Below are positions 21,426 to 64,000 of a stretch of DNA of 64,000 bases, piece after piece. Source of the stretch: Ranitomeya imitator (taxonomy: Eukaryota); NCBI RefSeq assembly GCF_032444005.1, contig NC_091285.1:54870001-54934000 (forward strand). The letters are read 5' to 3'. Every line of letters starts with the position of its first letter. Position 1 is the stretch's first letter. Both the position numbers and the translations under genes were made by a program. The notes under the pieces are model-generated. The model saw only the letters and a list, made by a program, of their open reading frames with translations, had not been told where the DNA came from and ran no database searches.

Positions 21426-21601
21426 TTAAAGTTCTTAAAAAGATATATTTTCAACATTCATTCCTGTAAACCAAAAATGTAAAGTGCAAACTTCCATTCG
21501 GTAAGAAACATGATGCTATAGAAATTAAAATAAATACAGAACAGAAAATATTCTCTGTCAATACAACTATAAAACGCATATGAATAAGCCTTGAATCATA
21601 C

Positions 21602-24025
21602 CTGAACAATGTTTCCAGGATTCAGATAATTGCTGGACGGACCATTCCCAGCAGTAGTTTCCTCGGTGTCTATGAGATTCTCTGTGGGAACGTTCTGCAC
21701 TGGTTTCAGATAAGCGATTTCATTCTGCTTGGAGTCCAGAGTCACACACACATCATATGAGAATGGGAAAGGTAAACTGGTATCACTGATCTCAGAAGGA
21801 CATCCCAGGGTGAACTGAGGATACACGTTTCTACTGTATGCCCCATAATTTGTAGGAGTACTTGATTTTCTGCATTTTAAGACTATGGTAATTAATACAG
21901 TTGCAATGAACACAATTGATATAAGAGCGATGGAAACCACCAAGTAGAAAGTTGCATTAGAAGAAGTATTAGAAATATTAGGTTGTTTCTTAATCTCTGG
22001 AACGACTTGTTGAAAGTTTTCAGCCACAACTAATTGTATTGAAACTGTACATGACAAAGATGAGACCCCATTATCCTTCACCAGAACCACAATTTTTTGT
22101 CTTAAGGTGTCTGTGTCCTGAATGTTACGTCCAATTTTGATTTCACCAGTATATTGGCCAATGGTGAAATAAGAAGGATCTGGTACTTGCAATAAGTGAT
22201 AGGAGAGCCAGGCGTTGTGTCCAGAGTCAGCGTCCACTGCAATCACTTTGGTGACTAGATAACCTTTCTCAGCAGAGTGAGGAATAAACTCAAATAATGC
22301 TGATCCCTCAGTGTCTGGTGATGGGTAGAGGATCTTCGGAGCATTATCATTCTTATCAATGATACATATCCTCACTGTGACATTACTGCTTAGAGGAGGA
22401 GATCCACTGTCTTTAGCCATCACCTGGAACTGAAATTCCCGCAACTGTTCATAGTCGAATGATCTCTGAGCATAGAGAACTCCAGATATTGAGTTTATGG
22501 AAATATAAGATGTCACAGGAATATCGTCTACGTTGCTGTTTAGAATGCTGTAACTTATTTTCCCATTTTCATCACCATCAGGATCTGAGGCTCGGACATT
22601 GTGTATTGATGTGCCTGGTTGGTTGTTTTCTCCAATATACAGAATATATTTCATCTTCTCAAAAACTGGAGCATTGTCATTCACATCTGAGATATTGAGC
22701 TGAATGGTTTTGTTGGTGGACAGTGGTGGAGATCCGCCATCCATACATTGTATGGTGACATTGTAGGAAGGATATCTTTCTCGGTCCATGCTAGCTGCAG
22801 TTACCAGTTTATAGTAAGTACTAGAAGATGGAATTAGCTGAAAAGCCAAAGTGCCTGAGATGTGACAAGCAACTTCACTATTCATCCCAGAGTCCAAGTC
22901 CTGGACATTCAGTAATGATACGACAGTTCCTGGTGGTGAGTCCTCTGGAATTGATGGTGAGAGAGATGTGATAGTTATTTCTGGGGCATTGTCATTGACA
23001 TCTATCACTTGTATTGTCACCTTACAATGGGTTACGTGACTTCCACCATCTTTTGCTACTACAGTCATTTCATAGGAATCCAGTGTTTCATAATCCAAAT
23101 TTCCAATTACTTTGATGTCCCCATTTACTGAGTCTATAGTAAATAACTGACGAGCATTGTCAGAAATATGACTAAAGGAATAAGCTATTTCAGCATTGGA
23201 CCCTTCATCTTCATCAGTTGCATTTAGATGAATTACAAGAGACCCAATAGCTGCATCTTCATGTAATCTTACACGATATGTGTCCTGATTAAACATCGGC
23301 AGGTTGTCATTAAAATCTTGGACAATAATCCTGACTGTAGCAGTGCTTGATTTCTGTGGGTTACCTCCATCCAAGGTTGTTAATATTAACTCATAGTAAC
23401 TCTGTTTCTCTCTGTCCAGAGACTTTTCTAGAATAATTTCTGGATATTTAATTCCATCTGTTGTAATTTTTTCTCCAAGGCCAAAGTTTTCATTGTCGCT
23501 CAGTGTATAACTTTGTATGGAGTTGGTGCCTAAGTCTGGATCTTGTGCATTTCCTAAAGCAAAACGAGTCCCCGGAGAGGTGAGCTCACTGATTTCTACT
23601 TCAAAATATTTGTCTGCGAATATCGGTGAGTTATCATTCACATCCTGGATTTCTATGGTGATTGTGTAAAAAGTCAAAGGATTTTCTATTACAGCTTCCA
23701 GGTTTATAAAGCAGTTTGGTTTATTTCCACATAACGTTTCTCTATCAATTCTGTCTGATACAAATAAGTCTCCATTTTCCAAATTAACACTGAAATATTG
23801 TTTGCTTTTTGCTTTTGAAATTAGTTGAAATTTTCTATTCGCAAATTCATCCACATTTAATCCCAGATCTTTTGCCACGTTCCCAATTACAGATCCTTTC
23901 TTCATTTCTTCAAGTACTGAATATTGTAGCTGTCCATAGGTATCAGTGATAAAGAAGAAAATAAAGGAAAATACCTTATAAATCTGCTGCCATTGTTTTC
24001 TTCTGTTTTCTTCTGTATGATTCAT
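21602..24025 (-). CDS. pcdhg: Clustered protocadherin gamma-type variable exon (complete)
   Basis: MNHTEENRRKQWQQ start at 24025 chosen by homology with the paralogs (an in-frame upstream ATG exists at 24058). EC1-6, TM, VCD; CAG|GTATGA donor at 21602/21601. Confidence 0.96.
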
Positions 24026-24226
24026 TGTCAAAAGAATGTGATATAAAAGTTTTCTCAACTGTAATCCACAATAAGGGAATATTATTCCATGAAAAGGGAA
24101 TTCCAGACTGCAGTGTGTCCTCTGTAAAAATAGTTGTGCTTTCCTATATCCGGTACTGTGAAATTGTAATGATTTTAGTTGATTTTCTTTCTCTTGAAGG
24201 TGGAAAAAATTGATAAGCAGTCTTAT

Positions 24227-24740: not shown

Positions 24741-26496
24741 TTAACCCCTTCACCCCAAAGCCTGTTTTCACCTTCCTAAACAGGTCAAATTTTACAATTC
24801 TGACCAGTGCCACCTTAAGTGGTAATAACTCTGGAACGCTTCAACAGATCCCACTGACTCTGAGAAAGTTTTCTCATGACATATTATACTTTATGATAGT
24901 GGTAAAAAAACATTTGATATGACTTGCATTTATTTGTGAAAATATTGGAAATTTAGCAAAAAATTGGAAAATTTTTCAAACTTTTAATTTTTATGCCCTT
25001 AAGTTAAAGAGTTATGTCACACAAAATAGTTAATAAAAAATATTTCCTTCATGTCTACTTAACATCAGCACAACTTTTGAAACATCATTTTATTTTTTCC
25101 CCAAAATTTACAAAGCCATTTTTAGGGACCACCTCACATATCAAGTGACTTTGAAGGGTCTATATGACAGAAAAAAACACAAAAGAGACACCATTCTAAA
25201 TATGTCACCCCTCAATGTGTTCAAAGCCCCATTCAAGAAACTTATTAACCCTTCAGGTGCTTCACAGGAATTAATGGAATGTGGAAGGAAAAAAATGAAC
25301 ATTTAACTTTTTTCACAAAAATTTTCACAAGGGTAACAGGAAAAAATGGTCCAAAAAATGTGTTGTGCAATTGCTTGAGAATATGTGGGAGAAAACCACT
25401 GTTTGAGCGCACAGCAGAGCTCAGTATGGAAGGAACGCCATTTAACTTTTTGAATTTAAAATTTGCGGGAATAATTAGCTGATGACATGTCGCATTTGGA
25501 AAGGCCCTGATGGGCCCAAACAGAGAAAAACATTCAAATGTGACATAATTTTGGAAACTAGACCCATCAGGAAACTTTTCTAGATGTATGGTGAGCACCA
25601 TGAATGCCCATGAGCTTCACAGTAGTCTATAAGGTTGAGGCGTGAAAATAAAAAAAATCACATTTTTCACACAAAAATGTTTCTTAGCCTCAAATTTTTC
25701 CATTTTCACAAGGGTATCAGTTGAAATTGCACCATAAAATTTGTCGGCAGGATTCAGAAGGAATGAGCGCAATTTGAGTTTTTGAATGCAACATTTTTTT
25801 AAATCATTAGTGGACGCTATGTCGTGCTTTGGAGAGCCCCTGATGTGCCTAAAAAATGGAAACACGCCACAAGTAACCCTATTTTGGAAACAAGACCCCC
25901 TCAAAGAACTTATCTAGATGTGTGGTGAGCACCTTGAACCCCCAGGTGCTTCACAGAAGTTAATAAGGTTGAGCTATGAAAATAAAAAAATCACCTATTT
26001 CCCACAAAAAAATGTTCTTTTAGCCCCAATTGTTTTTATTTTAAGCAAGGTTAAAAGGAAAGATGGACCCCAAAATTTGTTGTGCAATTTCTCCTGAGTA
26101 CACCAATGTCCCATATGTGTCCAAAAACTGATATTGAAGCACAGTGCAAAGTTCAGAAGGGAAGAAGTATGAAAGTACGACATTAGAGTTCAGATTTTGC
26201 TGGACTGGTTTGCGGGTGCCATAACTCATTGGCAAAGCCCCTGAGGTGCCAAAACAGTATAACCTCCCATAAGTTACCCCATATTACAAACCATACCTCT
26301 GAATGAATTCATCTAGTGGTGCAGTGATCATATTGACACGACAGGTGTCACAGAATTGTATACTATTGGGCAGTGAAAAAAAAATAATTACGTTTTTAAG
26401 ACACAAATTTTTTTTAGCCCCCAGATTTTATATTTTCACACTGGGAAATGGATAAAAATGGAACCAACATTTGTCACTGTGTGACAAAAGGGTTAA
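24741..26496. mobile_element. Non-autonomous piggyBac-like element with internal repeats
   Basis: TTAA|CCCCTTC start and AAAGGG|TTAA end; repeated ccaggtgcttcacag-type blocks inside. Its left ~500 bp recurs inverted at 32700-33214. Confidence 0.6.
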
Positions 26497-27511: not shown

Positions 27512-28437
27512 AATTAGTTACACCACGGAGTGGAGATCCGCAACACATAATAAAAACTTTTTTCTAGAAAAAAGAATTGTTTTTACATCGTCGAGAAATA
27601 TAGATTTTTATTTATCCACTAACAGTCCTATAGCAGATTGTAATTTGCATTAGAATATAACCTATACAGCTATGCCATTTTTATTTACATTTGTCCTTTT
27701 GATCGCAATTTATTCCACTTTTTGTTTGACAATCATAAAGTGATGAGAAAGTATAGTTTTTTGTCATTTTTATACAGTGTTTACTGGATGAGTTAAATGG
27801 TGTGACAGTTTTATATTTCAGGTCATTCCAGATGCAGTGATACCAAATATGTGTACTTTTTTTCAAATACAGTAAATATACGGATTTATTTGTAATATAC
27901 TGTATATATTTACAATTTTTTTTAACTTTTTTACTTAGACTTTCTATGGGATTTTAACTTGTATTACTCTGATCACTGGTATAATGCATGGCAATGCATT
28001 ACTGCTGTCAGTATTGCCCTGACCGACCGCCTTTTAAATTATGATTCTGGCATGGTCTAAAGGCCCCGTCACACTGAACGACGCAGCAGCGATCCCGACA
28101 ACGATACGACCTGTCCGGGATCGTTGCTGCGTCGCTATGAGATCGCTGGTGAGATGTCAAACAGAGCGATCTTCCCAACGACGCAGCAGCGATGCGGCGA
28201 CCTCTAGCGACCTGTACAACGACATCGTTGGTCGTTGTGACCCTGTCACATGGCTGCTATGATAACGATACAGACCTCGATGAGGGACGTCTTGTGTGAT
28301 GTTGTAGTCACACAGGCGTGCCTTTGTGTTGCCTTTTCCGCCCCCATTCAGTTAATTCGTGGTCGCTACTGCGTTCTGATTGGTCGGCGGCCTAGCCATA
28401 TGAGGCGACACGATAGCTCTTCCGTCCTTTGTTCCTG

Positions 28438-28572
28438 AGCGCGTGGTGGTGGATTGCAGATCGTTGTAGAGTTCTCCGGCCTGCGACTTCTAGCGCGTGG
28501 TGGTGGATTGCAGATCGTTGTAGAGTTCTCCGGCCTGCGACTTCTAGCGCGTGGTGGTGGATTGCAGATCCG
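28438..28572. repeat. 54-bp direct repeat, ~2.5 copies, in the Harbinger left arm
   Basis: agcgcgtggtggtggattgcagatcgttgtagagttctccggcctgcgacttct starts at 28438, 28492 and (partial) 28546. Confidence 0.9.
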
Positions 28573-29071
28573 TCCTGCGACTTCTATTCGTTTCTATTCT
28601 TCAACGGTTCTTCGGATATCTATACTTTGTGCACGGTAGGTATCGTTTGGGGTCTCAAATGCGTTTCCATTCCCTTTCCATTCCCTTGGCACCTATTATT
28701 CTTATATTTTTGCTCTGGAAGGAGGGAGGGAGTGCTTTGTTGGTATCTGTGTATATATATTTTAGCACATGGAGCCATTTTAAGTAGTCTCATGGGCACA
28801 GATAGGGTTACTAGGCCTTATTTTTTAAATAATAAATTTGGCTCTATGCCGGTTCCATTTGCATGGCAGGGGTACACAGCCTGCACTGGTGTGGTCAGTG
28901 GAGGACTATTGGAAGGAGGGACTGCAGACTGGCTGAGATTATTAGCAGTCCAGGCGAATTGTTCTCTATTTTACATTCACAGTAGTGTGGCTCATACATA
29001 AATCTTTTGAAATTCAAAATGTTGTTTAAAATTTTCCATATATGCTCACTGTATGCTATTCTTTCTTTCAG

Positions 29072-30329
29072 ATGTCTTTCAATACCGAGGAGTTTGTTCG
29101 GGAATTGATTGAGATGTATAGATCCCTGCCCTGCCTTTGGCAGATTAAATCCGCAGAGTACAGCAACAGAAACAAGAAGAGGGAGGCTTTTGCCAAACTT
29201 GTTGCTCTGTTTCAGTAGCATAACCCCAGCGAGAAGGTGGATGAAAGTGTAGTCCGAAAAAAGATCCAGGGTCTAAGAACAGTTTATAAAAAGGAGCTCA
29301 ACAAGGTGGTGAGGTCAAAGAAGTCTGGTGCCGCCACAGACGAGGTTTATGTGCCATCGTTATGGTACTTTGACTTACTTGGCTTCACCCGTGACCAGGA
29401 GCTCCCGCGTACAATGGCATCTTCAATGCGGCAGACCCTGGATGAAGACCCTGTGATCACGACTGACACCCCTGTTGGAGATGTAAGTACCTTCTTTGCT
29501 TGCTTCCCTGTAAAAAGCTTTAAAACTTGGTCTCTCATGCCATAGTCGAGTAGAAAATAGTAACTAAGTTTTTTCCTCTTTTATTATGCTGCATTTTATC
29601 CAAGTTATCCCTTCCACTTCAGATAAGTGCAATCCTTAACTTTTTGACCCCACTCAGTGCTCATACGGTTGAATTAAAAAAAATCCTATCCTGTACTACT
29701 AGTTCCCCCACTTATTTACTTCTAAATTTTCTGTTCCTGCAGCAAAATCGCCATGATGATCAGTCCACCCCGACCGGTGACAACCTGCTGTGACATGAAC
29801 CAAGCCGGGTGGAGGCTAATGAGGGGTCTATTGAAGACCCTGCACCCTCAACCCCCAACACAGCTTATTTACCACGTCGGATGAAGAATGGTCATAAAAA
29901 AAGGACACAGTGTCGCCATCGACAGAGTTGGTCACTTTGGCCAAGCAAATGTTGAGCCAGCAGACCAACAGTACAGGGGACAGCTTCGCCAACTTTGCCG
30001 CTGACCGGCTAGGGAAGCTGCAAGCCGCACAAAGAATCCATGCCGAGAGGGTGATATTTGAAACTTTAAGTAAAGCGGCAGCTGGACAGCTCGATGAAAG
30101 TTCAAGTGTGCACAGTTTTATGGAACGTGATCCGTGTTCATGGCAGCAAATGAATGAAACACCTCAGGCAATGCATGGCACACAAGCACACCGTCATAGA
30201 TCTCATCTGAACATGCCACTTGCCCCTCCACCACAATATCCCCGGTTTTCCCATTCTTTTCTTGGGCAATTATCATCTCCGCCCAGCCAAGGATTTTTGA
30301 ATGGTGAAAACCAGTATGAAGAATTATAG
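29072..30329 (+). pseudogene. Harbinger MADF-domain accessory gene, disrupted (2 coding exons: 29072-29482, 29743-30329)
   Basis: MSFNTEEFVRELIEMYRSLPCLWQIKSAEYSNRNKKREAF...KKIQGLRTVYKKEL...LWYFDLLGF (MADF pattern). GTAAGT donor at 29483, acceptor ttcctgcag. In-frame TAG at 29216, TGA at 29791, and a 1-nt frameshift in the A7 run near 29900. Confidence 0.82.
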
Positions 30330-30701
30330 TTCCATTAAATAATTTGGGTTATAAGTATAATTGTTGTATAGTTTAGTTATTTTATATTAAAGAGTTAAAT
30401 TTAAATGTTACTTTATGTTAAAAATTGTTATAAATAAAAAATTTTTGATAATTCAAAACTTGCAGCCTGCTTTACTGAATTCAGCATATAGTTATTAGCA
30501 GGTCTAGTAGGTGGGGTTATGTGCTGGGTGCATGTATACAGATGCATACATATAATGAGTGTTCGTGATGGAATTTGTTTGTTGTTTTTTACAAAGCGTA
30601 CACTTCAGGGGATATTAAATTTTTTTTTTTTATAAACAATATTAACAACCAACATCCTAATAAAACTTTGAACAAAAGCATCAACATAACAAAAAAAAAA
30701 A

Positions 30702-32251
30702 TTAATGGCTGCCGCTCTGCTGTTGTGCAGCCACAAAACGATCCAGCATCACTCCGTGCTGTTTGACTTGCTCAGCCAGTGTCCCCTGTGTCGCCATCAT
30801 CCTCCTGTGTGATGCCTGGAGGTCCTGTAATGTTGGGATTTCTATGGAGGGAATGGTAAAACTTAGTTTTGTACATGCATCAAACTATCATGTACGTGTT
30901 TGTTATTTAACAATTACGGTTTTCGGGTAAATCGGGTGAGGAAGAACTAAGGGACCACCCGGATCCTCTGGCATCACCGCCTAGGGAAAGATACAACACT
31001 TGATAGTACACGACAGTCCTATCCTTTACGAGTTGTATGGACCTATTTTTTAGTGCAATAATTACCGGGGGACATGACTTCACCCATGTCACGGAGTGAT
31101 GCTGGCGACCCTGTTGGTGACGAGCCTGTCGTTGACTCCTGCTGGGGCTCCGGGTCTGCTGGTGCTGGAGGGAAATAATTATTACATTATTACATATGAG
31201 GCGTGCGGAGCCGAGCCTGGTGTGTGTACGAGGCGTGCGGAGCCGAGCCTGGTGTGTACGAGGCGTGCGGAGCCGAGCCTGGTGTGTGTACGAGGCGTGC
31301 GGAGCCGAGCCTTGTGTGTGTACGAGGCGTGCGGAGCCGAGCCTGGTGTGTGTACGAGGCGTGCGGAGCCGAGCCTGGTGTGTGTACGAGGCGTGCGGAG
31401 CCGAGCCTGGTGTGTGTACGAGGCGTGCGGAGCCGAGCCTGGTGTGTGTACGAGGCGTGCGGAGCCGAGCCTGCTGTGTGTACGAGGCGTGCGGAGCCGA
31501 GCCTGGTGTGTGTACGAGGCGTGCGGAGCCGAGCCTGGTGTGTGTACGAGGCGTGCGGAGCCGAGCCTGGTGTGTACGAGGCGTGCGGAGCCGAGCCTGG
31601 TGTGTGTACGAGGCGTGCGGAGCCGGGCCTGGTGTGTGTACGAGGCGTGCGGAGGCGAGCCTGGTGTGTGTACGAGGCGTGCGGAGCCGAGCCTGGTGTG
31701 TGTACGAGGCGTGCGGAGCCGAGCCTGGTGTGTGTACGAGGCGTGCGGAGCCGAGCCTGGTGTGTACGAGGCGTGCGGAGCCGAGCCTGGTGTGTGTACG
31801 AGGCGTGCGGAGCCGAGCCTGGTGTGTGTACGAGGCGTGCGGAGCCGAGCCTGGTGTGTGTACGAGGCGTGCGGAGCCGAGCCTGGTGTGTACGAGGCGT
31901 GCGGAGCCGAGCCTGGTGTGTGTACGAGGCGTGCGGAGCCGAGCCTGGTGTGTGTACGAGGCGTGCGGAGCAACACTCACCACGATGTGGAAGGCTCTGT
32001 GACCGGATGCTGGCTAGGCGCTCACTGGACCTGTACTGCAGATCCGCCAGCTTCTTCCGGATCTGGGTACTGGAGCGCTGCACCCCAAATCTCTGGTCTA
32101 GGCCCCAACTGATCCTCCGCAGCACAGCCTGCTTATGGAGGACGGGATGCTCTTGGTGATTCTGACACCCATAATCACGGGCATCTAATTCAGTTATGAG
32201 GTAACGCACTTCTGCGTCACCCCAAGGCGTTGCACGACGCCTGGCCGCCAT
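30702..32251 (-). CDS. Predicted 4-exon, 184-aa Myb/SANT-like protein inside the Harbinger (exons 32251-31981, 31164-31084, 30980-30918, 30841-30702)
   Basis: Exon 1 RRRATPWGDAEVRYLI...K..VLRRI...FGVQRSSTQIRKKLADL has Myb/SANT-like spacing. Three GT-AG introns, all phase 1; the spliced 555 nt is open to TAA. Family assignment is by eye. Confidence 0.72.
31193..31970. repeat. CpG-rich 32-bp minisatellite (~24 copies, some 30-bp variants)
   Basis: Unit gtgtgtacgaggcgtgcggagccgagcctggt; it explains the six overlapping repetitive ORFs in the track. Confidence 0.97.
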
Positions 32252-32520
32252 TTTGCCGCCACTAGTGAAAAGCAAGGCCACAGCACTGTCCTTTCACCCG
32301 CCCACAACGCATCAGCGCCGTAAACCACGCCCACGACGCATCAACGTCACCGCGATTATTATAGACGACGCTGCTGCGTTCGCGAAGGAAGCGGTCTGTA
32401 TTGTAATCTCCAGATCACAACGAAGACGCTACTGCGTTCTGAATGTGACGCATTCTCAATACAACGTCTCCGGTTGCACTGGTAGACTGGAGTGTTGGTG
32501 GTTTCATGTATGGATATGTA

Positions 32521-33214
32521 TTAACCCTTTCCCGACCTGTGACACAGCGTATGCGTCGTGAAAGTCGGTGCCAATTCGACCAGTGACGCATATGCTGTGT
32601 CACAGAATGATCGCGTCCTTTTAGATCTGGTGAAAGGGTTAACTCCCATTACACCCGATTTGCAGTGACAGGGGGAGTGATAGTTTAGCCCGGGGGGGTG
32701 CATTTTTTAGAATGGTGTCACTTTTGGGTATTTCAGCCATATAGACCCCTCAAACTGACTTCAAATGTGAGGTGGTTCCTAAAAAAATTGGTTTTGTAAA
32801 TTTCATTCTAAAAATGAGAAATCGCTGGTCAAATTTGAACCCTTATAAGTTCCTAGCAACACAAAAAAAATTGTTTCCAAAATTGTGCTGATGTAAAGTA
32901 GACGTGTGGGAAATGTTATTTATTTTGTGTCACATATCTCTCTGGTTTCACAAAATAAAAATTCAAAATGTGAAAATTGTGAAATTTTCGAAATTTTTTA
33001 TAAATTTTCATTTTTATCACACATAAACGCAAAATTTATTGACCTAAATTTACCACTAACATGAAGCCCAATATGTCACGAAAAAACAAAATCAGAACCG
33101 CTAGGATCCGTTGAAGCGTTCCAGAGTTATTACCTCATAATGGGACACTGGTCAGAATTGCAAACAACGGCAAGGTCTTTAAGGTCAAAATAGGCTGGGT
33201 CACGAAGGGGTTAA
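32521..33214. mobile_element. piggyBac-type insertions nested in the Harbinger (small palindromic MITE 32521-32642 plus a terminal fragment)
   Basis: TTAA|CCCTTT...AAAGGG|TTAA hairpin. 32700-33214 is the reverse complement of the left end of the 24741 element and ends GAAGGGG|TTAA. Confidence 0.65.
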
Positions 33215-33455
33215 TGTTTAGGTAGGTGTTTAGATTTGTATGTATGTGAGTATGTATGTGTATATGTAGGTATCTGTGTAGATTTCAATGTTGATGTATA
33301 TGGATGTATCAGTATACATAGGAATACACGTATGTATATACGGGCCCTTACTGCAGAAAGAATGAGAAACAAAGCTTTTTCAAAGTAAAACAAACAGTTT
33401 ATTTGACAGATCAGTGCAATAACTAAAACAGTGTATAAATGTCAGTAGTAGCCCA

Positions 33456-34712
33456 CTATAAGTTCTGATGCTGCCAAGTAACAGCACCAGGACCGTTAAA
33501 ATATTGGCAGTAGTTGTCTCGGCAGGTCTTCGCATCGTGGGTGTTTCTGCCAGGTAACAATGGTTGAAGGCCTGCAATTGCGGGATCATTTGCGCGCCAT
33601 TCACCGAGCTGCACTTCCCCATTTAATAGGCCCACAGAGTCCATGAATCCAGGAGGACTATACGCCAAAGCATCGCGACGGCGAAGGAAGTTGTGAAGCA
33701 CACAACAAGCCAAAACAACAGAGTCTATCGATTCAAGCTTCATGTTAATAGGCGTGTGGAAAACTCTGAAGCGATTGGCCATGATACCGAAGGCATTTTC
33801 TACAACCCGACGTGCCCTTGACAAACGGTAATTGAAAATTCTTCTTTCCTCTGTTAGATTTTTTTGGGGGAACGGTTTGATAAGATTGGGATGAAGCGGG
33901 AAGGCCTCATCACCGACAAAAACAAAATTAAGGTTGCCTCTAGTCTCGGAGTTGGGAGGTAAGTGAAGGTCATAGTTGTTCAAACGCTCTCCAAAGAGTG
34001 TGTGCTCTAAAACGCCACCATCGGAAACCCTTCCATTCATGCCAACATCTACATTTATAAATTCATAATTCGCGTTAACAATGGCCATCAGGATGATGCT
34101 GAAATAGCCCTTATAATTAAAGAAGTAGGATCCGCTGTTCGGTGGTTGAGTGATCCGGACATGTTTCCCGTCCAAAGCCCCACCACAGTTTGGGAACTGC
34201 CAAAGCTGCTCAAAATCGGAGGCAATCTTTTTCCATTCCTCCTCCGTGTTGGGAAACTGCATGTAGCTACGTAGACTGTGGAAAATCGCATCACATGTCT
34301 CTGGAATTAGAACGCTGAGCAGGGTCCTTGAAATGGCTGAAGAAAAATGCAAGTCTTGCAGCGAGCGCCCGGTGGCCAGGAATCGCAGCGTGACTGCCAA
34401 TCTTTCATCGGCCGGGATGGCAGCACGCATCACTGTATCCTTCCGTTGAATCAGTGGAGTAATTCTTTCCAGTAAATGTTTGAAGGATTCCTCAGACATC
34501 CGCAGATAGTTGCGGAAATCATGAGGATTGTTATCCTGAAGCTCTCTTACAAGTTGCATGTGGGACAAATCAGACCTCTTCTGCAGCCATTCTCTGGTCC
34601 ACATGCGACGCTTTCGTTTAGAACGCCTCTCTTGCATCCGGGCCTCATCTTGACGCCGAGCTTCCTCAACCAGCAATGCAGCAAACACAACAGCACACTG
34701 CGCATTGTTCAT
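33456..34712 (-). CDS. Harbinger DDE transposase (HARBI1-like, DDE_Tnp_4 type), intact ORF of 418 aa
   Basis: GALDGKHV, GRVSDGGV, VGDEAFPL and FNYRLSRARRVVENAFG motifs with no stops. ATG at 34712 lies just after a pyrimidine-rich acceptor (tttcag, 34724). Confidence 0.95.
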   Translation of the reverse strand: MNNAQCAVVFAALLVEEARRQDEARMQERRSKRKRRMWTREWLQKRSDLSHMQLVRELQDNNPHDFRNYLRMSEESFKHLLERITPLIQRKDTVMRAAIPADERLAVTLRFLATGRSLQDLHFSSAISRTLLSVLIPETCDAIFHSLRSYMQFPNTEEEWKKIASDFEQLWQFPNCGGALDGKHVRITQPPNSGSYFFNYKGYFSIILMAIVNANYEFINVDVGMNGRVSDGGVLEHTLFGERLNNYDLHLPPNSETRGNLNFVFVGDEAFPLHPNLIKPFPQKNLTEERRIFNYRLSRARRVVENAFGIMANRFRVFHTPINMKLESIDSVVLACCVLHNFLRRRDALAYSPPGFMDSVGLLNGEVQLGEWRANDPAIAGLQPLLPGRNTHDAKTCRDNYCQYFNGPGAVTWQHQNL

Positions 34713-36084
34713 GATGCTGCACACTGAAACACATAAAAGAAAAAGAAGATAAATTTAATAAATAAAAAATTCAATTACGTTACCATGCATTACAGAAAAG
34801 ACCCCCTAAAATATCAGCCCGTGTAAAAGTATATCTACACAGATAGCAGACAAGCCCTCACTCCATCCCTCCACAGCAATGATAGCAGGAAATTATCTTT
34901 AGTTGCCCTGTATAAAAATTTAGGGGAAAATGAAAACGCAATTGCGACCACAAATACATACCATACACAATGTATAGTTGTCAGAAGAATCCTTGCAGAA
35001 CAGATTATCGAAATGGAAGAGGAGTCGCAGGCCGGAGAACTCTACAACGTTCTGCAATCCACCACGCGCTCAGGAACAAAGGACGGAAGGGCTATTATGT
35101 GTCGCCTTAAAGCATGGCCGCAAACCAATCAGAACGCAGTAGCGACCACCAATCGGAACAGAATGGGCGCGGAAAAGGCAACGCAAATGCACGCCTACAT
35201 GTCGGTGTCTGAGTCGTCAATGAGGTCGTTGGTAGGTGTCAAACAAAGCGATGTGTGTTCCCCAGCGGGACCTCAACGATCGAAAAATGGCCCAGGCCAT
35301 TCCGACATGACCAGCGATCTCACAGCAGGGGCCTGATCGCTGCTACGTGTCACACATAGCGAGATCGCTAGCGAGATCGCTGTTGCGTCACAAAACTTGT
35401 GACTCAGCAGCGATCTCGCTAGCGATCTCGCTATGTGTGACGGGGCCTTAACAGAACACCATAGCTGGCAGACCTGAAGGTTCTCATTTGACCTCCGGTT
35501 TCCATGGCTATCATTGGCAGACCATGATTATGTTATGAGGTGCCGATTGGGTGGGAGATGGAGTCGCCCCCTCCCCCTCATAGCCTTCTAAATGCTGCTA
35601 TTGCTATTGATTGCAACATTTAGGGGGTAAACAGCTGGGGACAGTGTGGCTTACAGTTACGTCATGAGTTGTGAAGTGGCTAAGTTCCCTAATTGGAGGA
35701 GTTAAAAAAAATTGGTTCTCATGCTTAGAAAAAAGGCACAAAAAGCAAGGGCTTCTGCTTTCATAAGTAACTCATTTCCCTACATGTTTTATCACAGGAG
35801 TATTTCTGCTGCATCAGTAGTCTTATGAGCTCATCATAAATCAAGCCAGTATATCTTCTAAATCACTGATATGATTTATGGTAAGCTCGGAAAGCTGGAT
35901 ATGTGGCAAAAACACTCAATCCTGGGATCCAATAGATAGTGAAATATGTTAACTTAGGCAGGAAAATGTTTTGCATCAGAAAATAGCAGATGTGAAACCC
36001 TGCTGCATCATCTGTACACTCACTTATCATATTAAGTGGTTTAAATGACTTACAGGCTCACAGGAAAAAAAAAATATATATATA

Positions 36085-37654
36085 TCTACTATATAATTGT
36101 CTAAGGGTCACTTCCGTCTTTCTGTCTGTCTGTAACGGAAATCCCAAGTCGCTGATTGGTCGCGACTCGCGGCAAAACAGCCACGACCAATCAGCGACAG
36201 GCACAGTCCAGCGGCAAAATGGCTGCTCCTTACTCCCCGCAGTCAGTGCCTGCTCCATACTCCCCTCCAGTCAGCGCTCACACAGGGTTAATGGCAGCGT
36301 TACCGGACCAAGTTATACCATGGTGTAACGCAGCCCATTAACGCTGCTATTAACCCTGTGTGACCAACTTTTTACTATTGATGCTGCCTATGCAGCATCA
36401 ATAGTAAAAAGATCTAATGTTAAAAATAATAAAAAAAATAAAAAATAGTTATATACTCACTGTCCGTCGGCCCCTCGGATCCAGAACAGGCCTTTACCGC
36501 TCCTCGCGATGCGCCGGTGACTGCTCCATACATTGTGATCTCGCGAGATGATGACGTAGCGGTCTCGCGAGACGGCTACGTCATCATCTCGCGTGACCGC
36601 AAAGCACTCTTGGGACCAGAGCACGTGAGAAGCATCGGTAAATGCTTCGCCTGGATCCGGGGGCCAACGGAAGGTGAGTATATAACTATTTTTTATTTAA
36701 ATTCTTTTTTTTAACAGGGATATGGTGCCCACATTGCTATATACTACGTGGGCTGTGCAATATACTACGCGGGCTGGGTAATATACTACGTGGGCTGTGC
36801 AATATACTACATGGGCTGTGCAATTTACTACATGGGCTGTGCAATATACTACGTGGGCTGTGTTATACACTATATGGGCTGTTATATACTACATGGGCTG
36901 TGCAATATACTACGTGGGCTGTGCAATATACTACGTGGCTGTGCAATATACTATGTGGCTGTGCAATATACTACGTAGTTGTGCTATATACTACGTGGAC
37001 TTTGCAATATACTATGTGGCCTGTGTTATACACTACGTGGGCTGTGTTATACACTACGTGGGCTGTTATATACTGCGTGCGAGGGCTGTTATATACTACG
37101 TGAGCTGTGTTATATGCTACGTGGGCTGTTATAAACTACGTGGCTGTGTTATATGCTATGTGGGCTGTTATACACTCCTTGGGCTGTGCTATATACTACA
37201 TGGCTGTGCTATATACTCCGTGGGCTGTGCTATATACTCTGTGGGCTGTGCTATATAGTACGTGGCTGTGCTATATACTACGTGGCTGTGCTATATACTC
37301 CATGGGCTGTGTTATATACTATGTGGCTGTGCTATATACTCCGTGGGCTGTGCTATATACTCCATGGGCTGTACTATATACTACATGGCTGTGCTATGTA
37401 CTACGTGGCTGTGCTATTTACTATGTGGGCTGTTATATACTACATGGCTGTGCTATATACTATGTGGCCGGCAGCGAACAATCAGCGACAGGCGCGGTCC
37501 GCCCACGAATTGGCGCGGGATTTGAACCACGCTTCGCTAATTGGTCATGACCGGCCGAATCCTGTGTATTCAATGTATTTTTCTAAAATCTTCATAAATA
37601 AACTACATACATATTCTAGAATACCCGATGTGTTAGAATCGGGCTACCATCTAG
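36085..37654 (+). mobile_element. Non-autonomous Helitron
   Basis: A|TC start at 36085, CTAG|T end at 37654, subterminal hairpin cccgat(37624)...atcggg(37643), no TSD. Confidence 0.85.
36735..37468. repeat. ~20-21 bp minisatellite inside the Helitron
   Basis: Degenerate unit tgtgctatatactacgtgggc; source of the YYVGCAI / YTTWAV ORFs. Confidence 0.95.
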
Positions 37655-40600
37655 TATATATATATATACATATATATATATCTGTACCATATTGCAAAAA
37701 TATACTCAGTGATCAGTTAAAAAAACTTATGGCCAGGGACAATGTTATGTGCAGACCATGAGCTGCAGCACTTCTGATACAGCAACTAACAATCCACAGC
37801 AGGGCACATTTAGCGGATAAGCTCGCATGCCTCCAAAGACCCACCTGCTAACGGACACAAGTATTAATATCTTTACCTTCTTTTTTAATGTTTGCCTATG
37901 ATACCAAACCTGTAGATGACATATAAATTAATCTGCTACCAAGACACAAAGAAACAAAATCATATTGAATTGCACTACCCAATGTTTTTATGGGGTTTTT
38001 GAAGCATTTCTAATGAATAAAACTATCTTAATTAAACATGTACTGTAGCCAAAGCATATTTAATCCACACCCCAAAAAAGTTGCAAAAAATGCCATTTTG
38101 CTGATTTCATGAGGTGTGAATTACAAGAAATCTGCATTCTGTTCAATACAGATTTTTGTAAAATTCAAGTAACCTTTTTCTATGCTCAAATATAATTATC
38201 CAACCTATATTGCCTTGCTAGACAGGTTAAAGGGTCTTCAGAGCACAAAAAAATACTGTTTGGCTGTTGTAAAGTGATCATGGGTGACAGCCATAGACGA
38301 GCTGCTGCTCCTTAATCGTGTCCTAGTCTCAATGTGCTGTCAGGTGTGGGGTGTATCACACTCACTTGAAGGCATCAGGCCTCTGCTGTCTGCAGGGCTC
38401 CATCTTCAGGAGTCCCCACACGTAACTCAGGGGACACCATGCTCATTTCAACAAACAATAGTTTACTGGACAGTTCAAGTTTATGAGATTGTAACATTCA
38501 GTGTTGGACAAAACACTTCTTATTTTTGTTTCCTTAAAACCGTATGTGTTCAGCATTGCTATGAGTTCCTCATGGTCTATCCCTATGTTTACTGTTTCTG
38601 TCATCACCAGGGATTTCCCATCTCATCTGCACTACACCTGGGATCCGTTACCTTCCCTTCACGCGGTTCCATTGTCCCCTGTATGCCAGATGATAATGAA
38701 CTCTCCATAGTACCTGTATTGAGCCTTGAGCAGCAGACATTGCAGGAGTGTCCGCAAGGGATTTCAGTAAGGCCTCCCACTGCCTTGAGTAATAAATGTT
38801 TGCTGACACTAGCAGCCCACTGCTCCTGAGCTTGACCTTGATTACTGTACTTCCCTATATGCTGCTACCAGGAAGTAGTTCCTTTTTATTGGGACTAGTC
38901 CCACCTTCTATGGGCTAGTCCCAACTATGTCTCTCCCTACACTGTGTAACTGGGCAGATATCCCTCACAACACAATGTATTATATCAGTTATCTTTTACT
39001 TTACATTCCCTATATTCCTGATGTACACTGTGCCTTTTATACTAACAATACTTATCCCGCACTATACATTATACATTACCATATCACATTATTTACACCT
39101 AAAACTGCAATGCACAGTCCACGCTTCACATGGCAAAATGTATGTCAAACCACATGACACTATTCACATTATAATGCACAGCACAGCATGATTGGTGTCT
39201 TCAAGGGCTGGAATGTGACAATACTGTCTATTTTGTCTAACAATCTTACACTAGCTCTGTAATGAGTCCTTGAACCCCAATTATTACCTTTATTTTCCTT
39301 TTTAGGCTCTCCTGCAGCCTCATACAGCCATCCTTGTGTTTTGTTATGGTTCACTTCCTGAACTTTCTGCCAGTTCTCCATTTCAGCTGTAGGCTACTTT
39401 TCCCAAGAATTTGGGCTGAATCTGTCCCACTCCACACATACTCCTACCATCACTACCCACCAACCCCAACTTCAAATGCAAAGCACTACGTGGAGACTCC
39501 CATACAGTCCTAAGATGGATAACTCATTGCAAACTCTACAGGTCTTATACCTAACATTCCTCCCACTTCACCTAGTATTTTCTATCCTAACACTTTCCTG
39601 AGTCAGTATTGTTACATGTGCTGACACAATGTAGGTGGGCAATGATTCACACAATGTAGTAATTTATTCTGATTTAATCTAGCATTTTGGAATATTCAGC
39701 TACATCCCCTCTGATTAAGTTCACAAATTGATAAGATTTTTTGCTCCCAGCTCTCCCTCCCCTCCCTGTGCACATCCCCAGTTACTGTAAACTTGCTGAG
39801 GATAAGAGGTCGTACTCCTTTATGAAATCATTATTCAGAGGTCACTGCATAGCTGCTGACTGAGCTGCTTACAGCATATACAGGAGATATCTGCTCTCTG
39901 CTTTGAAAAGGCCTGTAGCAAAATTAAAAGCACAACACTCATTTAAAGTGCTTTTTTTTACCACTGGAGTGGTGTCACTACTCAAAGTTCCTTGCCCTTA
40001 GTATTATACTTACCAGGGGCCACCTTCATCTGTTTTCGATGCTATTCTAGCCATCTTCTACTATTGTGTCACCTGCCAGATCACTCTAGTGTTTGCTAGG
40101 TGTTCTGGAAGGCACAACTGTTTATAAGTCTATAGGAGCCAGAAAGAAGCCAGAATGAGGCCTTCATAGATTTACATTGAGAGTTTGTCACCATTACCAA
40201 TGACTTCAGTCAGTCAGATGATGACATGGAACCAGAGAGGTTGCCAAGAACAGCTGAAGATGGTGGTTGTTAAATATAATACTAGGGGCAGGGAACTTAC
40301 ATTAATGGTGCCACTCTAGAGATGAAAAAAAAAACAAGAAAACGCAATAGCGGTTCTTCAGTAAACTTATCTATGGAGTTTCCATACTAGAGAACCGAAC
40401 TTAGGATGAGAGTATGGTGAATGAACCCTCTTATTCACCATACTAACCACAGCAGTGCTGTCTTATTTTTTTTCCAGACATATAATCATCAAGGATAGAC
40501 AGACAGAAATACAGATTGCTTACATAAAGTTTACAATATAAAATAGAAATCCAAATTACTTCTGTAGCTAAATATAAAATAATAAAGTGCAAACTGTGTA

Positions 40601-61014: not shown

Positions 61015-64000
61015 GATGTTGGTTCCAGGGGTACACGGCCAGCAGTGCCCTGGTCAGTGTAGTAGTAGTTGAAAGAATGGACCGCAGACAGGCATCGAAG
61101 GCCTAAAATAAAAAAATTGGGCTGGCTGTAGGCAATTTTAAATTGGTTCCAGGGGTACACGGGCAGCAGTGGTGTGGTCAGTGGAGGCCTAGTGGAAGGA
61201 GTGACCGCAGACAGGCATCGAAGGCCTAACATAACAAACTTGGGCTGGCTGTAGGCACTTTTAAATTGGTTCCAGGGGTACACGGGCAGCAGTGGTCTGG
61301 TCAGTGGAAGTCTAGTGGAAGGAGTGACCGCAGACAGGCATCGAAGGCCTAAAATAATAACACATGGCTGTAGGCAATTTTAAATTGGTTCCAGGGGTAC
61401 ACGGACAGCAGTGGTGTGGTCAGTGGAGGCCTAGTGGAAGGAGTGACCGCAGACAGGCATCGAAGGCCTAAAATAATAACACATGGCTGTAGGCAATTTT
61501 AAATTGGTTCCAGGGGTACACGGACAGCAGTGGTGTGGTCAGTGGAGGCCTAGTGGAAGGAGTGACCGCAGACAGGCATCGAAGGCCTAAAATAATAACA
61601 CATGGCTGTAGGCAATTTTAAATTGGTTCCAGGGGTACACGGGCAGCAGTGACCTGGTCAGTGTAGTAGTAGTTGAAAGAATGGACCGCAGACAGGCATC
61701 GAAGGCCTAAAATAAAAAAATTGGGCTGGCTGTAGGCAATTTTAAATTGGTTCCAGGGGTACACGGGCAGCAGTGACCTGGTCAGTGTAGTAGTAGTTGA
61801 AAGAATGGACCGCAGACAGGCATCGAAGGCCTAAAATAAAAAAATTGGGCTGGCTGTAGGCAATTTTAAATTGGTTCCAGGGGTACACGGGCAGCAGTGG
61901 TGTGGTCAGTGGAGGCCTAGTGGAAGGAGTGACCGCAGACAGGCATCGAAGGCCTAACATAACAAACTTGGGCTGGCTGTAGGCACTTTTAAATTGGTTC
62001 CAGGGGTACACGGGCAGCAGTGGTCTGGTCAGTGGAAGTCTAGTGGAAGGAGTGACCGCAGACAGGCATCGAAGGCCTAAAATAATAACACATGGCTGTA
62101 GGCAATTTTAAATTGGTTCCAGGGGTACACGGACAGCAGTGGTGTGGTCAGTGGAGGCCTAGTGGAAGGAGTCACCGCAGACAGGCATCGAAGGCCTAAA
62201 ATAATAACACATGGCTGTAGGCAATTTTAAATTGGTTCCAGGGGTACACGGGCAGCAGTGACCTGGTCAGTGTAGTAGTAGTTGAAAGAATGGACCGCAG
62301 ACAGGCATCGAAGGCCTAAAATAAAAAAATTGGGCTGGCTGTAGGCAATTTTAAATTGGTTCCAGGGGTACACGGGCAGCAGTGACCTGGTCAGTGTAGT
62401 AGTAGTTGAAAGAATGGACCGCAGACAGGCATCGAAGGCCTAAAATAAAAAAATTGGGCTGGCTGTAGGCAATTTTAAATTGGTTCCAGGGGTACACGGG
62501 CAGCAGTGACCTGGTCAGTGTAGTAGTAGTTGAAAGAATGGACCGCAGACAGGCATCGAAGGCCTAACATAACAAACTTGGGCTGGCTGTAGGCACTTTT
62601 AAATTGGTTCCAGGGGTACACGGGCAGCAGTGGTCTGGTCAGTGGAAGTCTAGTGGAAGGAGTGACCGCAGACAGGCTTCCAAGGCCTAACATAACAAAC
62701 TTGGGCTGGCTGTAGGCACTTTTAAATTGGTTCCAGGGGTACACGGGCAGCAGTGACCTGGTCAGTGTAGTAGTAGTTGAAAGAATGGACCGCAGACAGG
62801 CATCGAAGGCCTAAAATAAAAAAATTGGGCTGGCTGTAGGCAATTTTAAATTGGTTCCAGGGGTACACGGGCAGCAGTGACCTGGTCAGTGTAGTAGTAG
62901 TTGAAAGAATGGACCGCAGACAGGCATCGAAGGCCTAAAATAAAAAAATTGGGCTGGCTGTAGGCAATTTTAAATTGGTTCCAGGGGTACACGGGCAGCA
63001 GTGACCTGGTCAGTGTAGTAGTAGTTGAAAGAATGGACCGCAGACAGGCATCGAAGGCCTAAAATAAAAAAATTGGGCTGGCTGTAGGCAATTTTAAATT
63101 GGTTCCAGGGGTACACGGGCAGCAGTGACCTGGTCAGTGTAGTAGTAGTTGAAAGAATGGACCGCAGACAGGCATCGAAGGCCTAAAATAAAAAAATTGG
63201 GCTGGCTGTAGGCAATTTTAAATTGGTTCCAGGGGTACACGGGCAGCAGTGACCTGGTCAGTGTAGTAGTAGTTGAAAGAATGGACCGCAGACAGGCATC
63301 GAAGGCCTAAAATAAAAAAATTGGGCTGGCTGTAGGCAATTTTAAATTGGTTCCAGGGGTACACGGGCAGCAGTGGTGTGGTCAGTGGAGGCCTAGTGGA
63401 AGGAGTGACCGCAGACAGGCATCGAAGGCCTAAAATAATAACACATGGCTGTAGGCACTTTTAAATTGGTTCCAGGGGTACACGGGCAGCAGTGGTCTGG
63501 TCAGTGGAAGTCTAGTGGAAGGAGTGACCGCAGACAGGCTTCGAAGGCCTAACATAACAAAATTGGGCTGGCTGTAGGCACTTTAAATTGGTTCCAGGGG
63601 TACATGGGCAGCAGTGTATGGTCAGTGGAAGTCTAGTGGAAGGAGTGACGGCAGACAGTCTTCGAAGGCCTAACATAACAAAATTGGGCTGACTGTAGGC
63701 ACTTTTAAATTGGTTCCAGGGGTACACGGGCAGCAGTGACCTGGTCAGTGTAGTAGTAGTTGAAAGAATGGACCGCAGACAGGCATCGAAGGCCTAAAAT
63801 AAAAAAATTGGGCTGGCTGTAGGCAATTTTAAATTGGTTCCAGGGGTACACGGGCAGCAGTGACCTGGTCAGTGTAGTAGTAGTTGAAAGAATGGACCGC
63901 AGACAGGCATCGAAGGCCTAAAATAAAAAAATTGGGCTGGCTGTAGGCAATTTTAAATTGGTTCCAGGGGTACACGGGCAGCAGTGACCTGGTCAGTGTA
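61015..64000. repeat. 119-124 bp tandem repeat array (about 25 copies, continues past the edge)
   Basis: aaattggttccaggggtacacgg anchors each unit; several unit variants. Confidence 0.97.

What the first reader, a model, noticed from the sequence alone, without database searches (positions are those of the whole stretch)
30702..32251. Hidden third gene in a Harbinger: intact 4-exon Myb/SANT-like protein
Established: Harbinger elements typically encode two proteins, a transposase and one Myb/MADF DNA-binding partner. Seen: this TIR/TSD-bounded copy has a further minus-strand gene convergent with the MADF gene. Exons 32251-31981 (271 nt), 31164-31084 (81), 30980-30918 (63) and 30841-30702 (140) join through GT-AG introns that are all phase 1, with similar ttccct..ag acceptors. 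The product is an unbroken 184-aa protein: Myb/SANT-like N-terminus (RRRATPWGDAEVRYLI...QRSSTQIRKKLADL), Ser/Pro/acidic linker, and an amphipathic C-terminal helix (LQDLQASHRRMM...LAEQVKQHGVMLDRFV). The ORF track misses it because intron 1 is a minisatellite. Inference: a three-gene Harbinger lineage with two different DNA-binding proteins. Extra ORFs may already be known in some Harbingers, so novelty is unconfirmed.
Basis: partly seen in the sequence, partly recalled or inferred. Interest (0 to 1): 0.82.

Follow-up and report, generated by a model that had tools for sequence, protein, structure and literature searches.

The report
Third gene in frog Harbinger transposon
A Harbinger jumping gene in a poison-frog genome carries, besides its transposase and MADF partner, a real, spliced third gene for a small DNA-binding-type protein, and the same three-gene set also sits inside Harbinger copies of the clawed frog Xenopus, so it is an old, conserved feature of this transposon lineage and not a chance reading frame.

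Summary
The four minus-strand exons splice through GT-AG, phase-1 introns into an open frame. RNA contigs and annotated homologues use an exon-2 donor 18 nt further on (exon 2 = 31164-31066), which gives 190 aa instead of 184. The exon 1-exon 2 junction was not seen in RNA.

The gene lies inside a TAA-flanked Harbinger (28061-35448) with an intact DDE_Tnp_4 transposase. The MADF gene of this copy is broken by an in-frame TAG.

The product has a confidently modelled three-helix Myb/SANT (trihelix) domain, a disordered linker and a long C-terminal helix. Its nearest folds are GT-1 and the Harbinger-derived NAIF1 and MSANTD proteins. Pfam hits stay below threshold.

All named homologues come from frogs and are multi-copy. 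In Anomaloglossus one lies just downstream of a Harbinger transposase. In Xenopus laevis, three loci on different chromosomes carry transposase, MADF and the homologue together. Two of them share the same TIRs with TAA-type duplications and have unrelated flanks. Gene order differs from the window.

Function is inferred: a second, NAIF1-like accessory or regulatory factor. I found no published description, but Repbase and Dfam could not be consulted. Unchecked first-reader notes elsewhere in this genome also report three- and four-gene Harbingers.

The parts
28058..28074 (+). Left TAA target-site duplication (28058-28060) and left terminal inverted repeat AGGCCCCGTCACAC (28061-28074).
   Evidence: Read directly. 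Inverted-repeat pair I23.
28088..28171 (.). Left subterminal AGCGATC motifs (3 copies), candidate binding sites for an element-encoded Myb-type protein.
   Evidence: All 9 AGCGATC matches in the 64-kb window lie within about 135 nt of the two element ends. Chance expects 2.4, and 0 of 100 shuffles reached 9.
28314..28790 (+). Left arm of a long inverted duplication shared with 34799-35196. It is the likely promoter, 5' exon and start of intron that drive the MADF gene, mirroring the transposase side.
   Evidence: Inverted repeats I1, I2, I4, I5 and I7 at 70-96% complementarity.
29072..30329 (+). MADF partner gene. The first coding exon runs 29072 to about 29482 and the last exon about 29904-30329. 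It is broken in this copy by an in-frame TAG at 29216-29218, inside the MADF domain.
   Evidence: The two pieces either side of the TAG hit MADF_DNA_bdg profile positions 1-34 (E 2.5e-6) and 39-83 (E 3.4e-4). The Xenopus copies read through at the aligned position. Splice candidates.
30702..30841 (-). Third gene, exon 4: the C-terminal helix and the stop codon.
   Evidence: The junction 30841|30918 appears in RNA runs X1, X2 and X6. One RNA contig has 2 changes in this 140-nt exon against 16 in the 178-nt 3' UTR.
30918..30980 (-). Third gene, exon 3 (63 nt). It is skipped in some R. imitator models of 167-169 aa.
31066..31164 (-). Third gene, exon 2 as supported by RNA (99 nt).
   Evidence: Junction 30980|31066 in run X2. 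Six extra residues in P0001-P0003.
31198..31971 (.). 32-nt minisatellite, 24.4 copies, filling intron 1 of the third gene.
   Evidence: Tandem Repeats Finder, 96% matches.
31981..32251 (-). Third gene, exon 1 (271 nt): the start codon and the whole Myb/SANT-like trihelix domain.
   Evidence: AF2 pLDDT 95-98 over helices 12-24, 36-55, 61-73 and 76-86. X. laevis homologues also have a 271-nt, phase-1 exon 1.
32252..32523 (-). Upstream region of the third gene, with a TATAATAA box near 32350 and a tandem GATGCGTYGTGGGCG pair. This is the likely own promoter.
   Evidence: Sequence read. An RNA contig reaches 32291, and depth is zero at 32323-32439 and 33259-33492, so there is no read-through from the transposase.
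32524..33213 (.). Nested insertion(s) with TTAA flanks and CCC...GGG ends (piggyBac-type MITEs). Not part of the Harbinger proper.
   Evidence: Read. RNA-contig depth is in the thousands. A related copy lies at 24791-25211.
33456..34724 (-). Transposase open reading frame (first ATG at 34712), intact, with a complete DDE_Tnp_4 domain.
   Evidence: Pfam E 3.3e-33 over profile positions 1-158 of 158. Covered by RNA contigs.
34799..35196 (-). Right arm of the long inverted duplication: promoter, 5' exon and intron start of the transposase gene.
35313..35451 (-). Right subterminal AGCGATC motifs (6 copies, 35313-35427), right TIR (35435-35448) and TAA duplication (35449-35451).

Best explanation
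Window 30702-32251 (minus strand) is a real, element-borne third gene of a frog PIF/Harbinger lineage.

It has its own TATA-type upstream region and four exons. It encodes a protein of about 190 aa with three parts:
- an N-terminal Myb/SANT (trihelix) three-helix domain with a basic third helix;
- a variable, disordered Ser/Pro/acidic linker;
- a conserved C-terminal helix of about 39 residues.

This is the architecture of NAIF1 and the MSANTD proteins, the host genes derived from the classical vertebrate Harbinger Myb-like partner.

Shown here: the frame is real, introns 2 and 3 are spliced, the protein family is conserved across frogs, and it sits together with the transposase and MADF genes inside the TIRs.

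Inferred mechanism: the protein acts as a second accessory factor. Its trihelix domain would bind element DNA, either the subterminal repeats or an internal promoter. Its C-terminal helix would pair with itself, the transposase or the MADF protein. The jobs that a single Myb-like partner does in two-gene Harbingers (end recognition, recruitment and nuclear import of the transposase) would then be shared between two proteins, or one of them would regulate transposition.

This particular copy cannot be autonomous on its own, because its MADF gene carries a premature stop.

The confidence of 0.8 is for the claim that this is a real, conserved, element-borne third gene. The specific cofactor mechanism alone is about 0.45.
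For: Reading frame and splice signals.

RNA junctions for introns 2 and 3.

Homologues: R. imitator paralogues at 82-98% identity and 167-191 aa. Phyllobates, Anomaloglossus and Dendrobates relatives keep the domain and the C-terminal helix while the linker diverges. A profile search gave 59 hits, and every named one is a frog protein.

Context: MADF gene convergent downstream in three R. imitator loci. DDE_Tnp_4 gene upstream on the same strand in Anomaloglossus. X. laevis L003, L004 and L005 on three chromosomes each carry transposase, MADF and the homologue. L003 and L005 share identical TIR ends and TAA-type duplications, with unrelated flanks.

Gene structure: exon 1 is 271 nt and phase 1 in both Xenopus and the window.

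Fold: AF2 mean pLDDT 81, with the domain at 95-98 and the C-terminal helix at 94-98. Foldseek top hits are the GT-1 trihelix domain (probability 0.95), Zeste, NAIF1 (0.99) and MSANTD1-5. The protein-language-model neighbours are all Myb_DNA-bind_4/5 clusters.

Long-term constraint: the two Xenopus subfamilies are saturated at synonymous sites but keep open frames and 64% identity in the domain.

Known role of the Harbinger Myb-like partner (binds the transposase, imports it into the nucleus, binds the TIRs): PMC9179366.
Against: - The exon 1-exon 2 junction was not seen in five RNA runs, and two contigs retain intron 1 sequence.
- Pfam Myb hits are below the gathering score.
- Foldseek E-values are weak (0.02-0.7) and whole-chain TM is under 0.5.
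- Direct selection tests lack power: 7 synonymous against 9 non-synonymous variants in RNA contigs, and only 8 differences between two Xenopus copies.
- No transposase gene was called next to four R. imitator copies.
- Unchecked notes report two-gene Harbingers in the same genome, so the third gene may be dispensable.
- No DNA-binding or protein-interaction data exist.
Confidence: 0.8

Rival explanations
1. The third protein is a regulator encoded by the element and not a transposition cofactor. It would act as a repressor or anti-silencing transcription factor, binding element promoters or host chromatin to tune expression of the transposase and MADF genes, or to limit copy number.
For: It has its own promoter region, separate from the duplicated terminal promoters that appear to drive the MADF and transposase genes. 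It evolves faster than its neighbours: 38% identity between Xenopus and the window, against 60-70% for the transposase and 50-61% for MADF. The conserved MADF protein could already cover the canonical partner role. Two-gene Harbingers are reported in the same genome in unchecked notes.
Against: No AGCGATC-type or other element-wide motif was tied to it. The architecture matches NAIF1-type partners that act in transposition (PMC9179366). Nothing here distinguishes regulation from cofactor activity.
Confidence: 0.3
2. The segment is a captured or transduplicated fragment of a host gene that rides along in the element and has no role for it.
For: DNA transposons do capture host fragments. Exons 2-4-like sequence turns up in chimeric gene models with PHD-type zinc fingers or Tc1-like N-termini in Anomaloglossus and others.
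Against: No single-copy host parent was found, and every named homologue is an uncharacterised, often multi-copy frog protein. The gene is complete, with a promoter region, start, stop and conserved intron phase. It is kept with the transposase and MADF genes in pipid and dendrobatoid frogs, despite saturated synonymous divergence.
Confidence: 0.05
3. The segment is an unrelated nested transposon, or a chance reading frame stitched together from weak splice signals.
For: This copy does contain nested MITEs right next to the gene. The exon 1-exon 2 junction is unobserved.
Against: No inverted repeats or duplications flank 30330-32520 other than a low-complexity CATA match. Dozens of homologues keep the same frame, and two of the three junctions are seen in RNA. 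Identical TIRs enclose all three genes at two Xenopus loci.
Confidence: 0.03

Closest known systems
Canonical two-gene PIF/Harbinger elements of vertebrates (for example Harbinger3_DR: a transposase plus one Myb-like partner)
   Same: DDE_Tnp_4 transposase, short TIRs, a 3-bp TAA duplication, subterminal repeated motifs, and a separately transcribed Myb-type partner gene (PMC9179366).
   Different: This lineage carries two partner-type genes instead of one: a MADF gene and a trihelix plus C-terminal-helix gene. The papers I could search describe only two ORFs, or one in Spy elements.
NAIF1 and the MSANTD1-4 proteins (host genes derived from Harbinger Myb-like partners)
   Same: The same domain order: an N-terminal Myb/SANT trihelix, then a long helix towards the C-terminus. 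They are the best Foldseek matches among reviewed proteins (NAIF1 probability 0.99, MSANTD4 0.90).
   Different: No significant sequence similarity was detected. The protein is much shorter (190 against 278-345 aa). It is multi-copy and sits inside a mobile element, not at a fixed host locus. The family was found only in frogs.
Plant GT-1 trihelix DNA-binding domain (Pfam Myb_DNA-bind_4)
   Same: It is the best solved-structure match (2ebi probability 0.95, TM by target 0.60) and the best Pfam family for the window protein.
   Different: The Pfam score is below the gathering cut-off. Only one of the usual conserved tryptophans (W10) is obvious. There is no evidence of common function beyond the fold.
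MADF-partner Harbingers of insects and nematodes
   Same: The element also carries a MADF partner gene of that type (PMC9710019 and PMC13668399 listed).
   Different: Those elements are described with MADF as the only partner. Here MADF co-exists with a second, NAIF1-like gene.

Membership tests
PIF/Harbinger DNA transposon (the element as a whole) | DDE transposase of the DDE_Tnp_4 / Plant_tran type | tested here: met
   PF13359 E 3.3e-33, full profile coverage, intact ORF 33456-34724.
PIF/Harbinger DNA transposon (the element as a whole) | Terminal inverted repeats and a 3-bp TWA target-site duplication | tested here: met
   TIR AGGCCCCGTCACAC at both ends, flanked by TAA at 28058-60 and 35449-51.
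PIF/Harbinger DNA transposon (the element as a whole) | A second gene for a Myb/SANT/MADF-type partner | tested here: met
   MADF gene at 29072-30329, although a TAG at 29216-18 interrupts it in this copy.
Myb/SANT-like trihelix domain (Pfam Myb_DNA-bind_4 / Myb_DNA-bind_5) | Score above the Pfam gathering threshold | tested here: not met
   18 bits (window form) and 22.1 bits (P0001) against a cut-off of 27. Among 35 family members, 14 hit Myb_DNA-bind_5 and 10 hit Myb_DNA-bind_4, with a best E-value of 1.5e-4.
Myb/SANT-like trihelix domain (Pfam Myb_DNA-bind_4 / Myb_DNA-bind_5) | Three-helix bundle fold matching solved Myb/SANT/trihelix domains | tested here: met
   AF2 helices 12-24, 36-55 and 61-73 at pLDDT 95-98. 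GT-1 2ebi probability 0.95, TM by target 0.60. Zeste 5cqq TM by target 0.67, rmsd 2.7. E-values are weak, 0.2-1.3.
Myb/SANT-like trihelix domain (Pfam Myb_DNA-bind_4 / Myb_DNA-bind_5) | Sequence-specific DNA binding | not testable with these tools
   The only indication is a basic third helix (R65, K66, K67), invariant in the dendrobatoid alignment.
NAIF1-type Harbinger Myb-like partner | N-terminal trihelix domain plus a C-terminal helical region | tested here: met
   The model aligns end to end with NAIF1 (residues 1-189 to 3-252, probability 0.99) and with MSANTD4 and MSANTD1.
NAIF1-type Harbinger Myb-like partner | Detectable sequence homology to known Harbinger Myb-like proteins, NAIF1 or MSANTD | tested here: not met
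   Profile searches returned only uncharacterised frog proteins.
NAIF1-type Harbinger Myb-like partner | Binds the transposase, promotes its nuclear import and binds the element ends | not testable with these tools
   Known for Harbinger3_DR from PMC9179366.
Nested independent transposon | Own terminal repeats and target-site duplication around the segment | tested here: not met
   No credible inverted repeat flanks 30330-32520. In Xenopus the element TIRs enclose all three genes.
Transduplicated host gene fragment | A host parent gene outside transposons, with the element copy being a partial derivative | tested here: not met
   No such parent appeared among the hits. The gene is complete and conserved with its Harbinger neighbours across frog families.

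The most novel reading that the evidence does not exclude
Frog Harbingers run a two-partner system. The MADF protein and the NAIF1-like trihelix protein would both be needed and would divide the labour, for example one reading the subterminal AGCGATC repeats and the other bridging to or importing the transposase, or each marking a different end. This would be the first natural DNA transposon of the superfamily with three obligatory trans-acting proteins. It would also give a living model of how NAIF1- and MADF-type partners were exchanged during Harbinger evolution.
Probability: 0.3. Interest if true: 0.7.

Novelty: new variant of a known kind. Interest (0 to 1): 0.58.

Why it matters
Harbinger elements are the textbook case of a DNA transposon that needs a second, DNA-binding protein. 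Both of their genes have repeatedly been domesticated in vertebrates (HARBI1, NAIF1, MSANTD1-4).

A lineage that stably carries two different Myb-type genes from pipid to dendrobatoid frogs raises several testable questions:
- Is the partner function split, duplicated or regulated?
- How do MADF-type and NAIF1-type partners replace one another?
- Do the many uncharacterised multi-copy frog 'LOC' proteins derive from this gene?

In practice, frog genome annotations currently list these proteins as unnamed host genes, and some as chimeras with KRAB or PHD exons. Recognising them as transposon genes would clean up those gene sets.

Tried and rejected
- DNA of other dendrobatid copies could not be fetched because the assembly files are too large. 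No copy-based dN/dS was therefore possible for the window's own family.
- As substitutes I classified RNA-contig variants (7 synonymous, 9 non-synonymous) and compared two Xenopus copies (omega 0.45 from 8 changes). Both lack power.
- Look-ups of Xenopus isoform X2 proteins failed because only the longest product is indexed.
- The first AF2 model, built from six sequences, was poor (pLDDT 62). A 35-sequence alignment fixed this.
- A wider profile search with the 35-sequence alignment did not reach beyond frogs.
- I considered and rejected alternative splicing from the transposase transcript. It was suggested by Phyllobates models that fuse the first 30 transposase residues to exon 1. The window has no GT donor at that point, and RNA depth is zero between the genes, so an internally deleted derivative in Phyllobates is more likely.
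- I considered and rejected own TIRs around the gene.
- Literature searches for a three-ORF Harbinger found nothing relevant.
- The primary paper on Harbinger3_DR is not held.

Full report
**1. What is in the sequence**

Every intron begins with GT and ends with AG. All are phase 1, and the acceptors share a ttccct..ag pattern.

Intron 1 (31165-31980) is almost wholly a 32-nt minisatellite of 24.4 copies.

The surrounding element is a Harbinger:
- It spans 28061-35448, has the TIR AGGCCCCGTCACAC at both ends, and is flanked by TAA on each side.
- All nine AGCGATC heptamers of the 64-kb window lie within about 135 nt of its two ends. Chance expects 2.4.
- A long inverted duplication (28314-28790 against 34799-35196) places similar upstream sequence in front of the MADF gene on the left and the transposase gene on the right.
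- The transposase frame (33456-34724, minus strand) is open and has a complete DDE_Tnp_4 domain, E 3.3e-33.

The MADF gene (from 29072, plus strand) is not intact in this copy. An in-frame TAG at 29216-29218 splits the MADF domain into pieces that match profile positions 1-34 and 39-83. Xenopus relatives read through at the aligned position.

Between the transposase and the third gene lie nested TTAA-flanked MITEs (32524-33213).

**2. Is the gene expressed and spliced as proposed?**

I laid Logan contigs of RNA runs on the parts beside the minisatellite.
- The intron 3 junction (30841|30918) is present in three runs.
- The intron 2 junction is present once, but as 30980|31066.
- This matches the Ranitomeya imitator gene models, which carry six extra residues at that point. 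Some of those models skip exon 3.
- Exon 1 is covered at low depth. One contig reaches 32291, and depth is zero further upstream and between the transposase and the MITEs. Transcription therefore seems to start at the gene's own upstream region, which holds a TATAATAA box.
- The exon 1-exon 2 junction was not seen. One contig runs through the exon 1 donor, and another has intron 2 removed but keeps 27 nt of intron 1.

Indirect support for that junction:
- RefSeq and other gene models in Ranitomeya, Dendrobates and Anomaloglossus join the domain to the C-terminal part.
- In Xenopus laevis, exact splice reconstruction of two homologues gives a 271-nt, phase-1 first exon, the same length and phase as in the window. 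The intron falls within two aligned codons of the window's.

**3. What the protein is**

Pfam gives only a sub-threshold match to Myb_DNA-bind_4: 18 bits for the window form and 22 bits for P0001, against a cut-off of 27. Of 35 family members, 14 touch Myb_DNA-bind_5 and 10 touch Myb_DNA-bind_4, all weakly.

With a 35-sequence alignment, AlphaFold2 gives a confident model with mean pLDDT 81:
- helices 12-24, 36-55, 61-73 and 76-86 at pLDDT 95-98;
- a disordered stretch at 88-145;
- a single long helix at 149-187, pLDDT 94-98.

Foldseek places the domain next to the Arabidopsis GT-1 trihelix domain (probability 0.95, TM by target 0.60) and Zeste. It places the whole chain next to NAIF1 (probability 0.99), MSANTD4, MSANTD1, MSANTD5, MSANTD2, MSANTD3 and MYPOP. 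According to PMC9392472, these are the vertebrate genes derived, or suspected to derive, from Harbinger Myb-like partners.

E-values are weak (0.02-0.7) and whole-chain TM is below 0.5. This is a consistent resemblance of fold and architecture, not proof of family membership. Protein-language-model neighbours are all Myb_DNA-bind_4/5 clusters.

**4. Does it belong to the transposon?**

- Close homologues (82-98% identity) are multi-copy in R. imitator. The host is therefore a dendrobatid, probably Ranitomeya.
- In three of four R. imitator loci, a MADF gene lies convergent just downstream, as in the window.
- In Anomaloglossus, a full-length homologue (P0016) sits 1.5 kb downstream of a 415-aa DDE_Tnp_4 gene on the same strand.
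- A profile search of 1.84 billion representatives found 59 relatives. Every named one is a frog protein: Xenopus, Engystomops, Lithobates, Aquarana, Nanorana, Eleutherodactylus, Hyla, Hyperolius and the dendrobatoids.

For X. laevis, DNA was available.
- Loci L003, L004 and L005, on three chromosomes, each carry a transposase 60-70% identical to the window's, a MADF gene (50-61%) and the third-gene homologue (38%).
- L003 and L005 have identical 20-nt terminal sequences in inverted orientation that enclose all three genes.
- They have TAA-type flanking triplets, nearly identical interiors and unrelated flanks. The three genes therefore move as one unit.
- Gene order differs. In Xenopus it is transposase, then MADF on the opposite strand, then the third gene. 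In the window it is transposase, third gene, then MADF on the opposite strand.

No inverted repeat or duplication of its own flanks the third gene in the window.

**5. Selection**

Direct tests are weak.
- RNA-contig variants in exons 2-4 split 7 synonymous to 9 non-synonymous.
- Two young Xenopus copies differ at only 8 sites, giving omega 0.45.
- One RNA contig has 2 changes in the 140-nt exon 4 against 16 in the adjacent 178-nt 3' UTR.

The stronger argument is long-term retention. Two Xenopus subfamilies are saturated at synonymous sites yet keep open frames and 64% identity in the domain. Dendrobatoid proteins keep the domain and the C-terminal helix nearly invariant while the linker changes freely.

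**6. How it probably works**

In two-gene Harbingers, the single Myb-like partner binds the transposase, brings it into the nucleus and binds the element ends (PMC9179366).

This lineage has a conserved MADF protein and, in addition, a NAIF1-like trihelix protein with a long terminal helix. My best reading is a second accessory factor whose domain binds element DNA and whose helix mediates pairing with itself, the transposase or MADF. A regulatory role (repressor or anti-silencing factor) is the main rival. Neither can be separated with sequence alone.

This copy has an open transposase frame and an open third gene, but a broken MADF gene. It would need MADF supplied from another copy.

**7. 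Novelty**

Papers on fish, insect, nematode and newt Harbingers describe two ORFs, or one in Spy elements. None that I could search mentions a third ORF. Repbase and Dfam could not be consulted, and the Xenopus consensus entries may already list it. Public databases name the homologues only as uncharacterised proteins.

First-reader notes on other pieces of this same genome report a three-gene and a four-gene Harbinger, as well as two-gene ones. These are unchecked and are not independent evidence.

I rate this a new variant of a known kind, of moderate interest.

Noticed in passing
window 29216-29218: An in-frame TAG inside the MADF domain of this copy's partner gene. The element is otherwise young-looking, with an open transposase frame and perfect TIR cores.
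   Followed up: yes
window 32524-33213 and 24791-25211: TTAA-flanked insertions with CCC...GGG ends (piggyBac-type MITEs) nested between the transposase and the third gene. RNA-contig depth is in the thousands. A 74-82% related copy lies outside the element, in opposite orientation.
   Followed up: partly
window 61019-64000 and 28867-28933: A 124-nt tandem array of 24 copies running off the window end. Each unit contains a 67-nt stretch 81-87% identical to a piece of the Harbinger's MADF-side intron region.
   Followed up: partly
window 21596-24058 (minus strand): An 820-aa single-exon protocadherin-type frame (five Cadherin domains, Cadherin_2, Cadherin_C_2). The Harbinger sits in a clustered protocadherin region.
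   Followed up: partly
Phyllobates terribilis proteins P0008 and P0015: Gene models that fuse KRAB-type host exons and the first 30 residues of the Harbinger transposase directly to exon 1 of the third gene. This looks like an internally deleted element read as part of a host gene.
   Followed up: partly
Anomaloglossus proteins P0013 and P0014; protein P0023: Models that attach a PHD-type zinc finger or a Tc1-like N-terminus to sequence resembling exons 2-4 of the third gene. They are either annotation chimeras across nested repeats or real exon shuffling.
   Followed up: no
window 28446-28560: A 54-nt unit present about 2.5 times in the left long inverted repeat but only once in the right arm (35020-35065).
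   Followed up: no
window 36748-37761: A long tandem repeat giving Tyr/Cys/Ala-rich open frames in several phases. Probably a minisatellite, not a gene.
   Followed up: no
L003 8631-8997 (X. laevis): The MADF gene of this Xenopus copy has a frameshift, while the L004 and L005 copies read through. The third gene is open in all three.
   Followed up: partly
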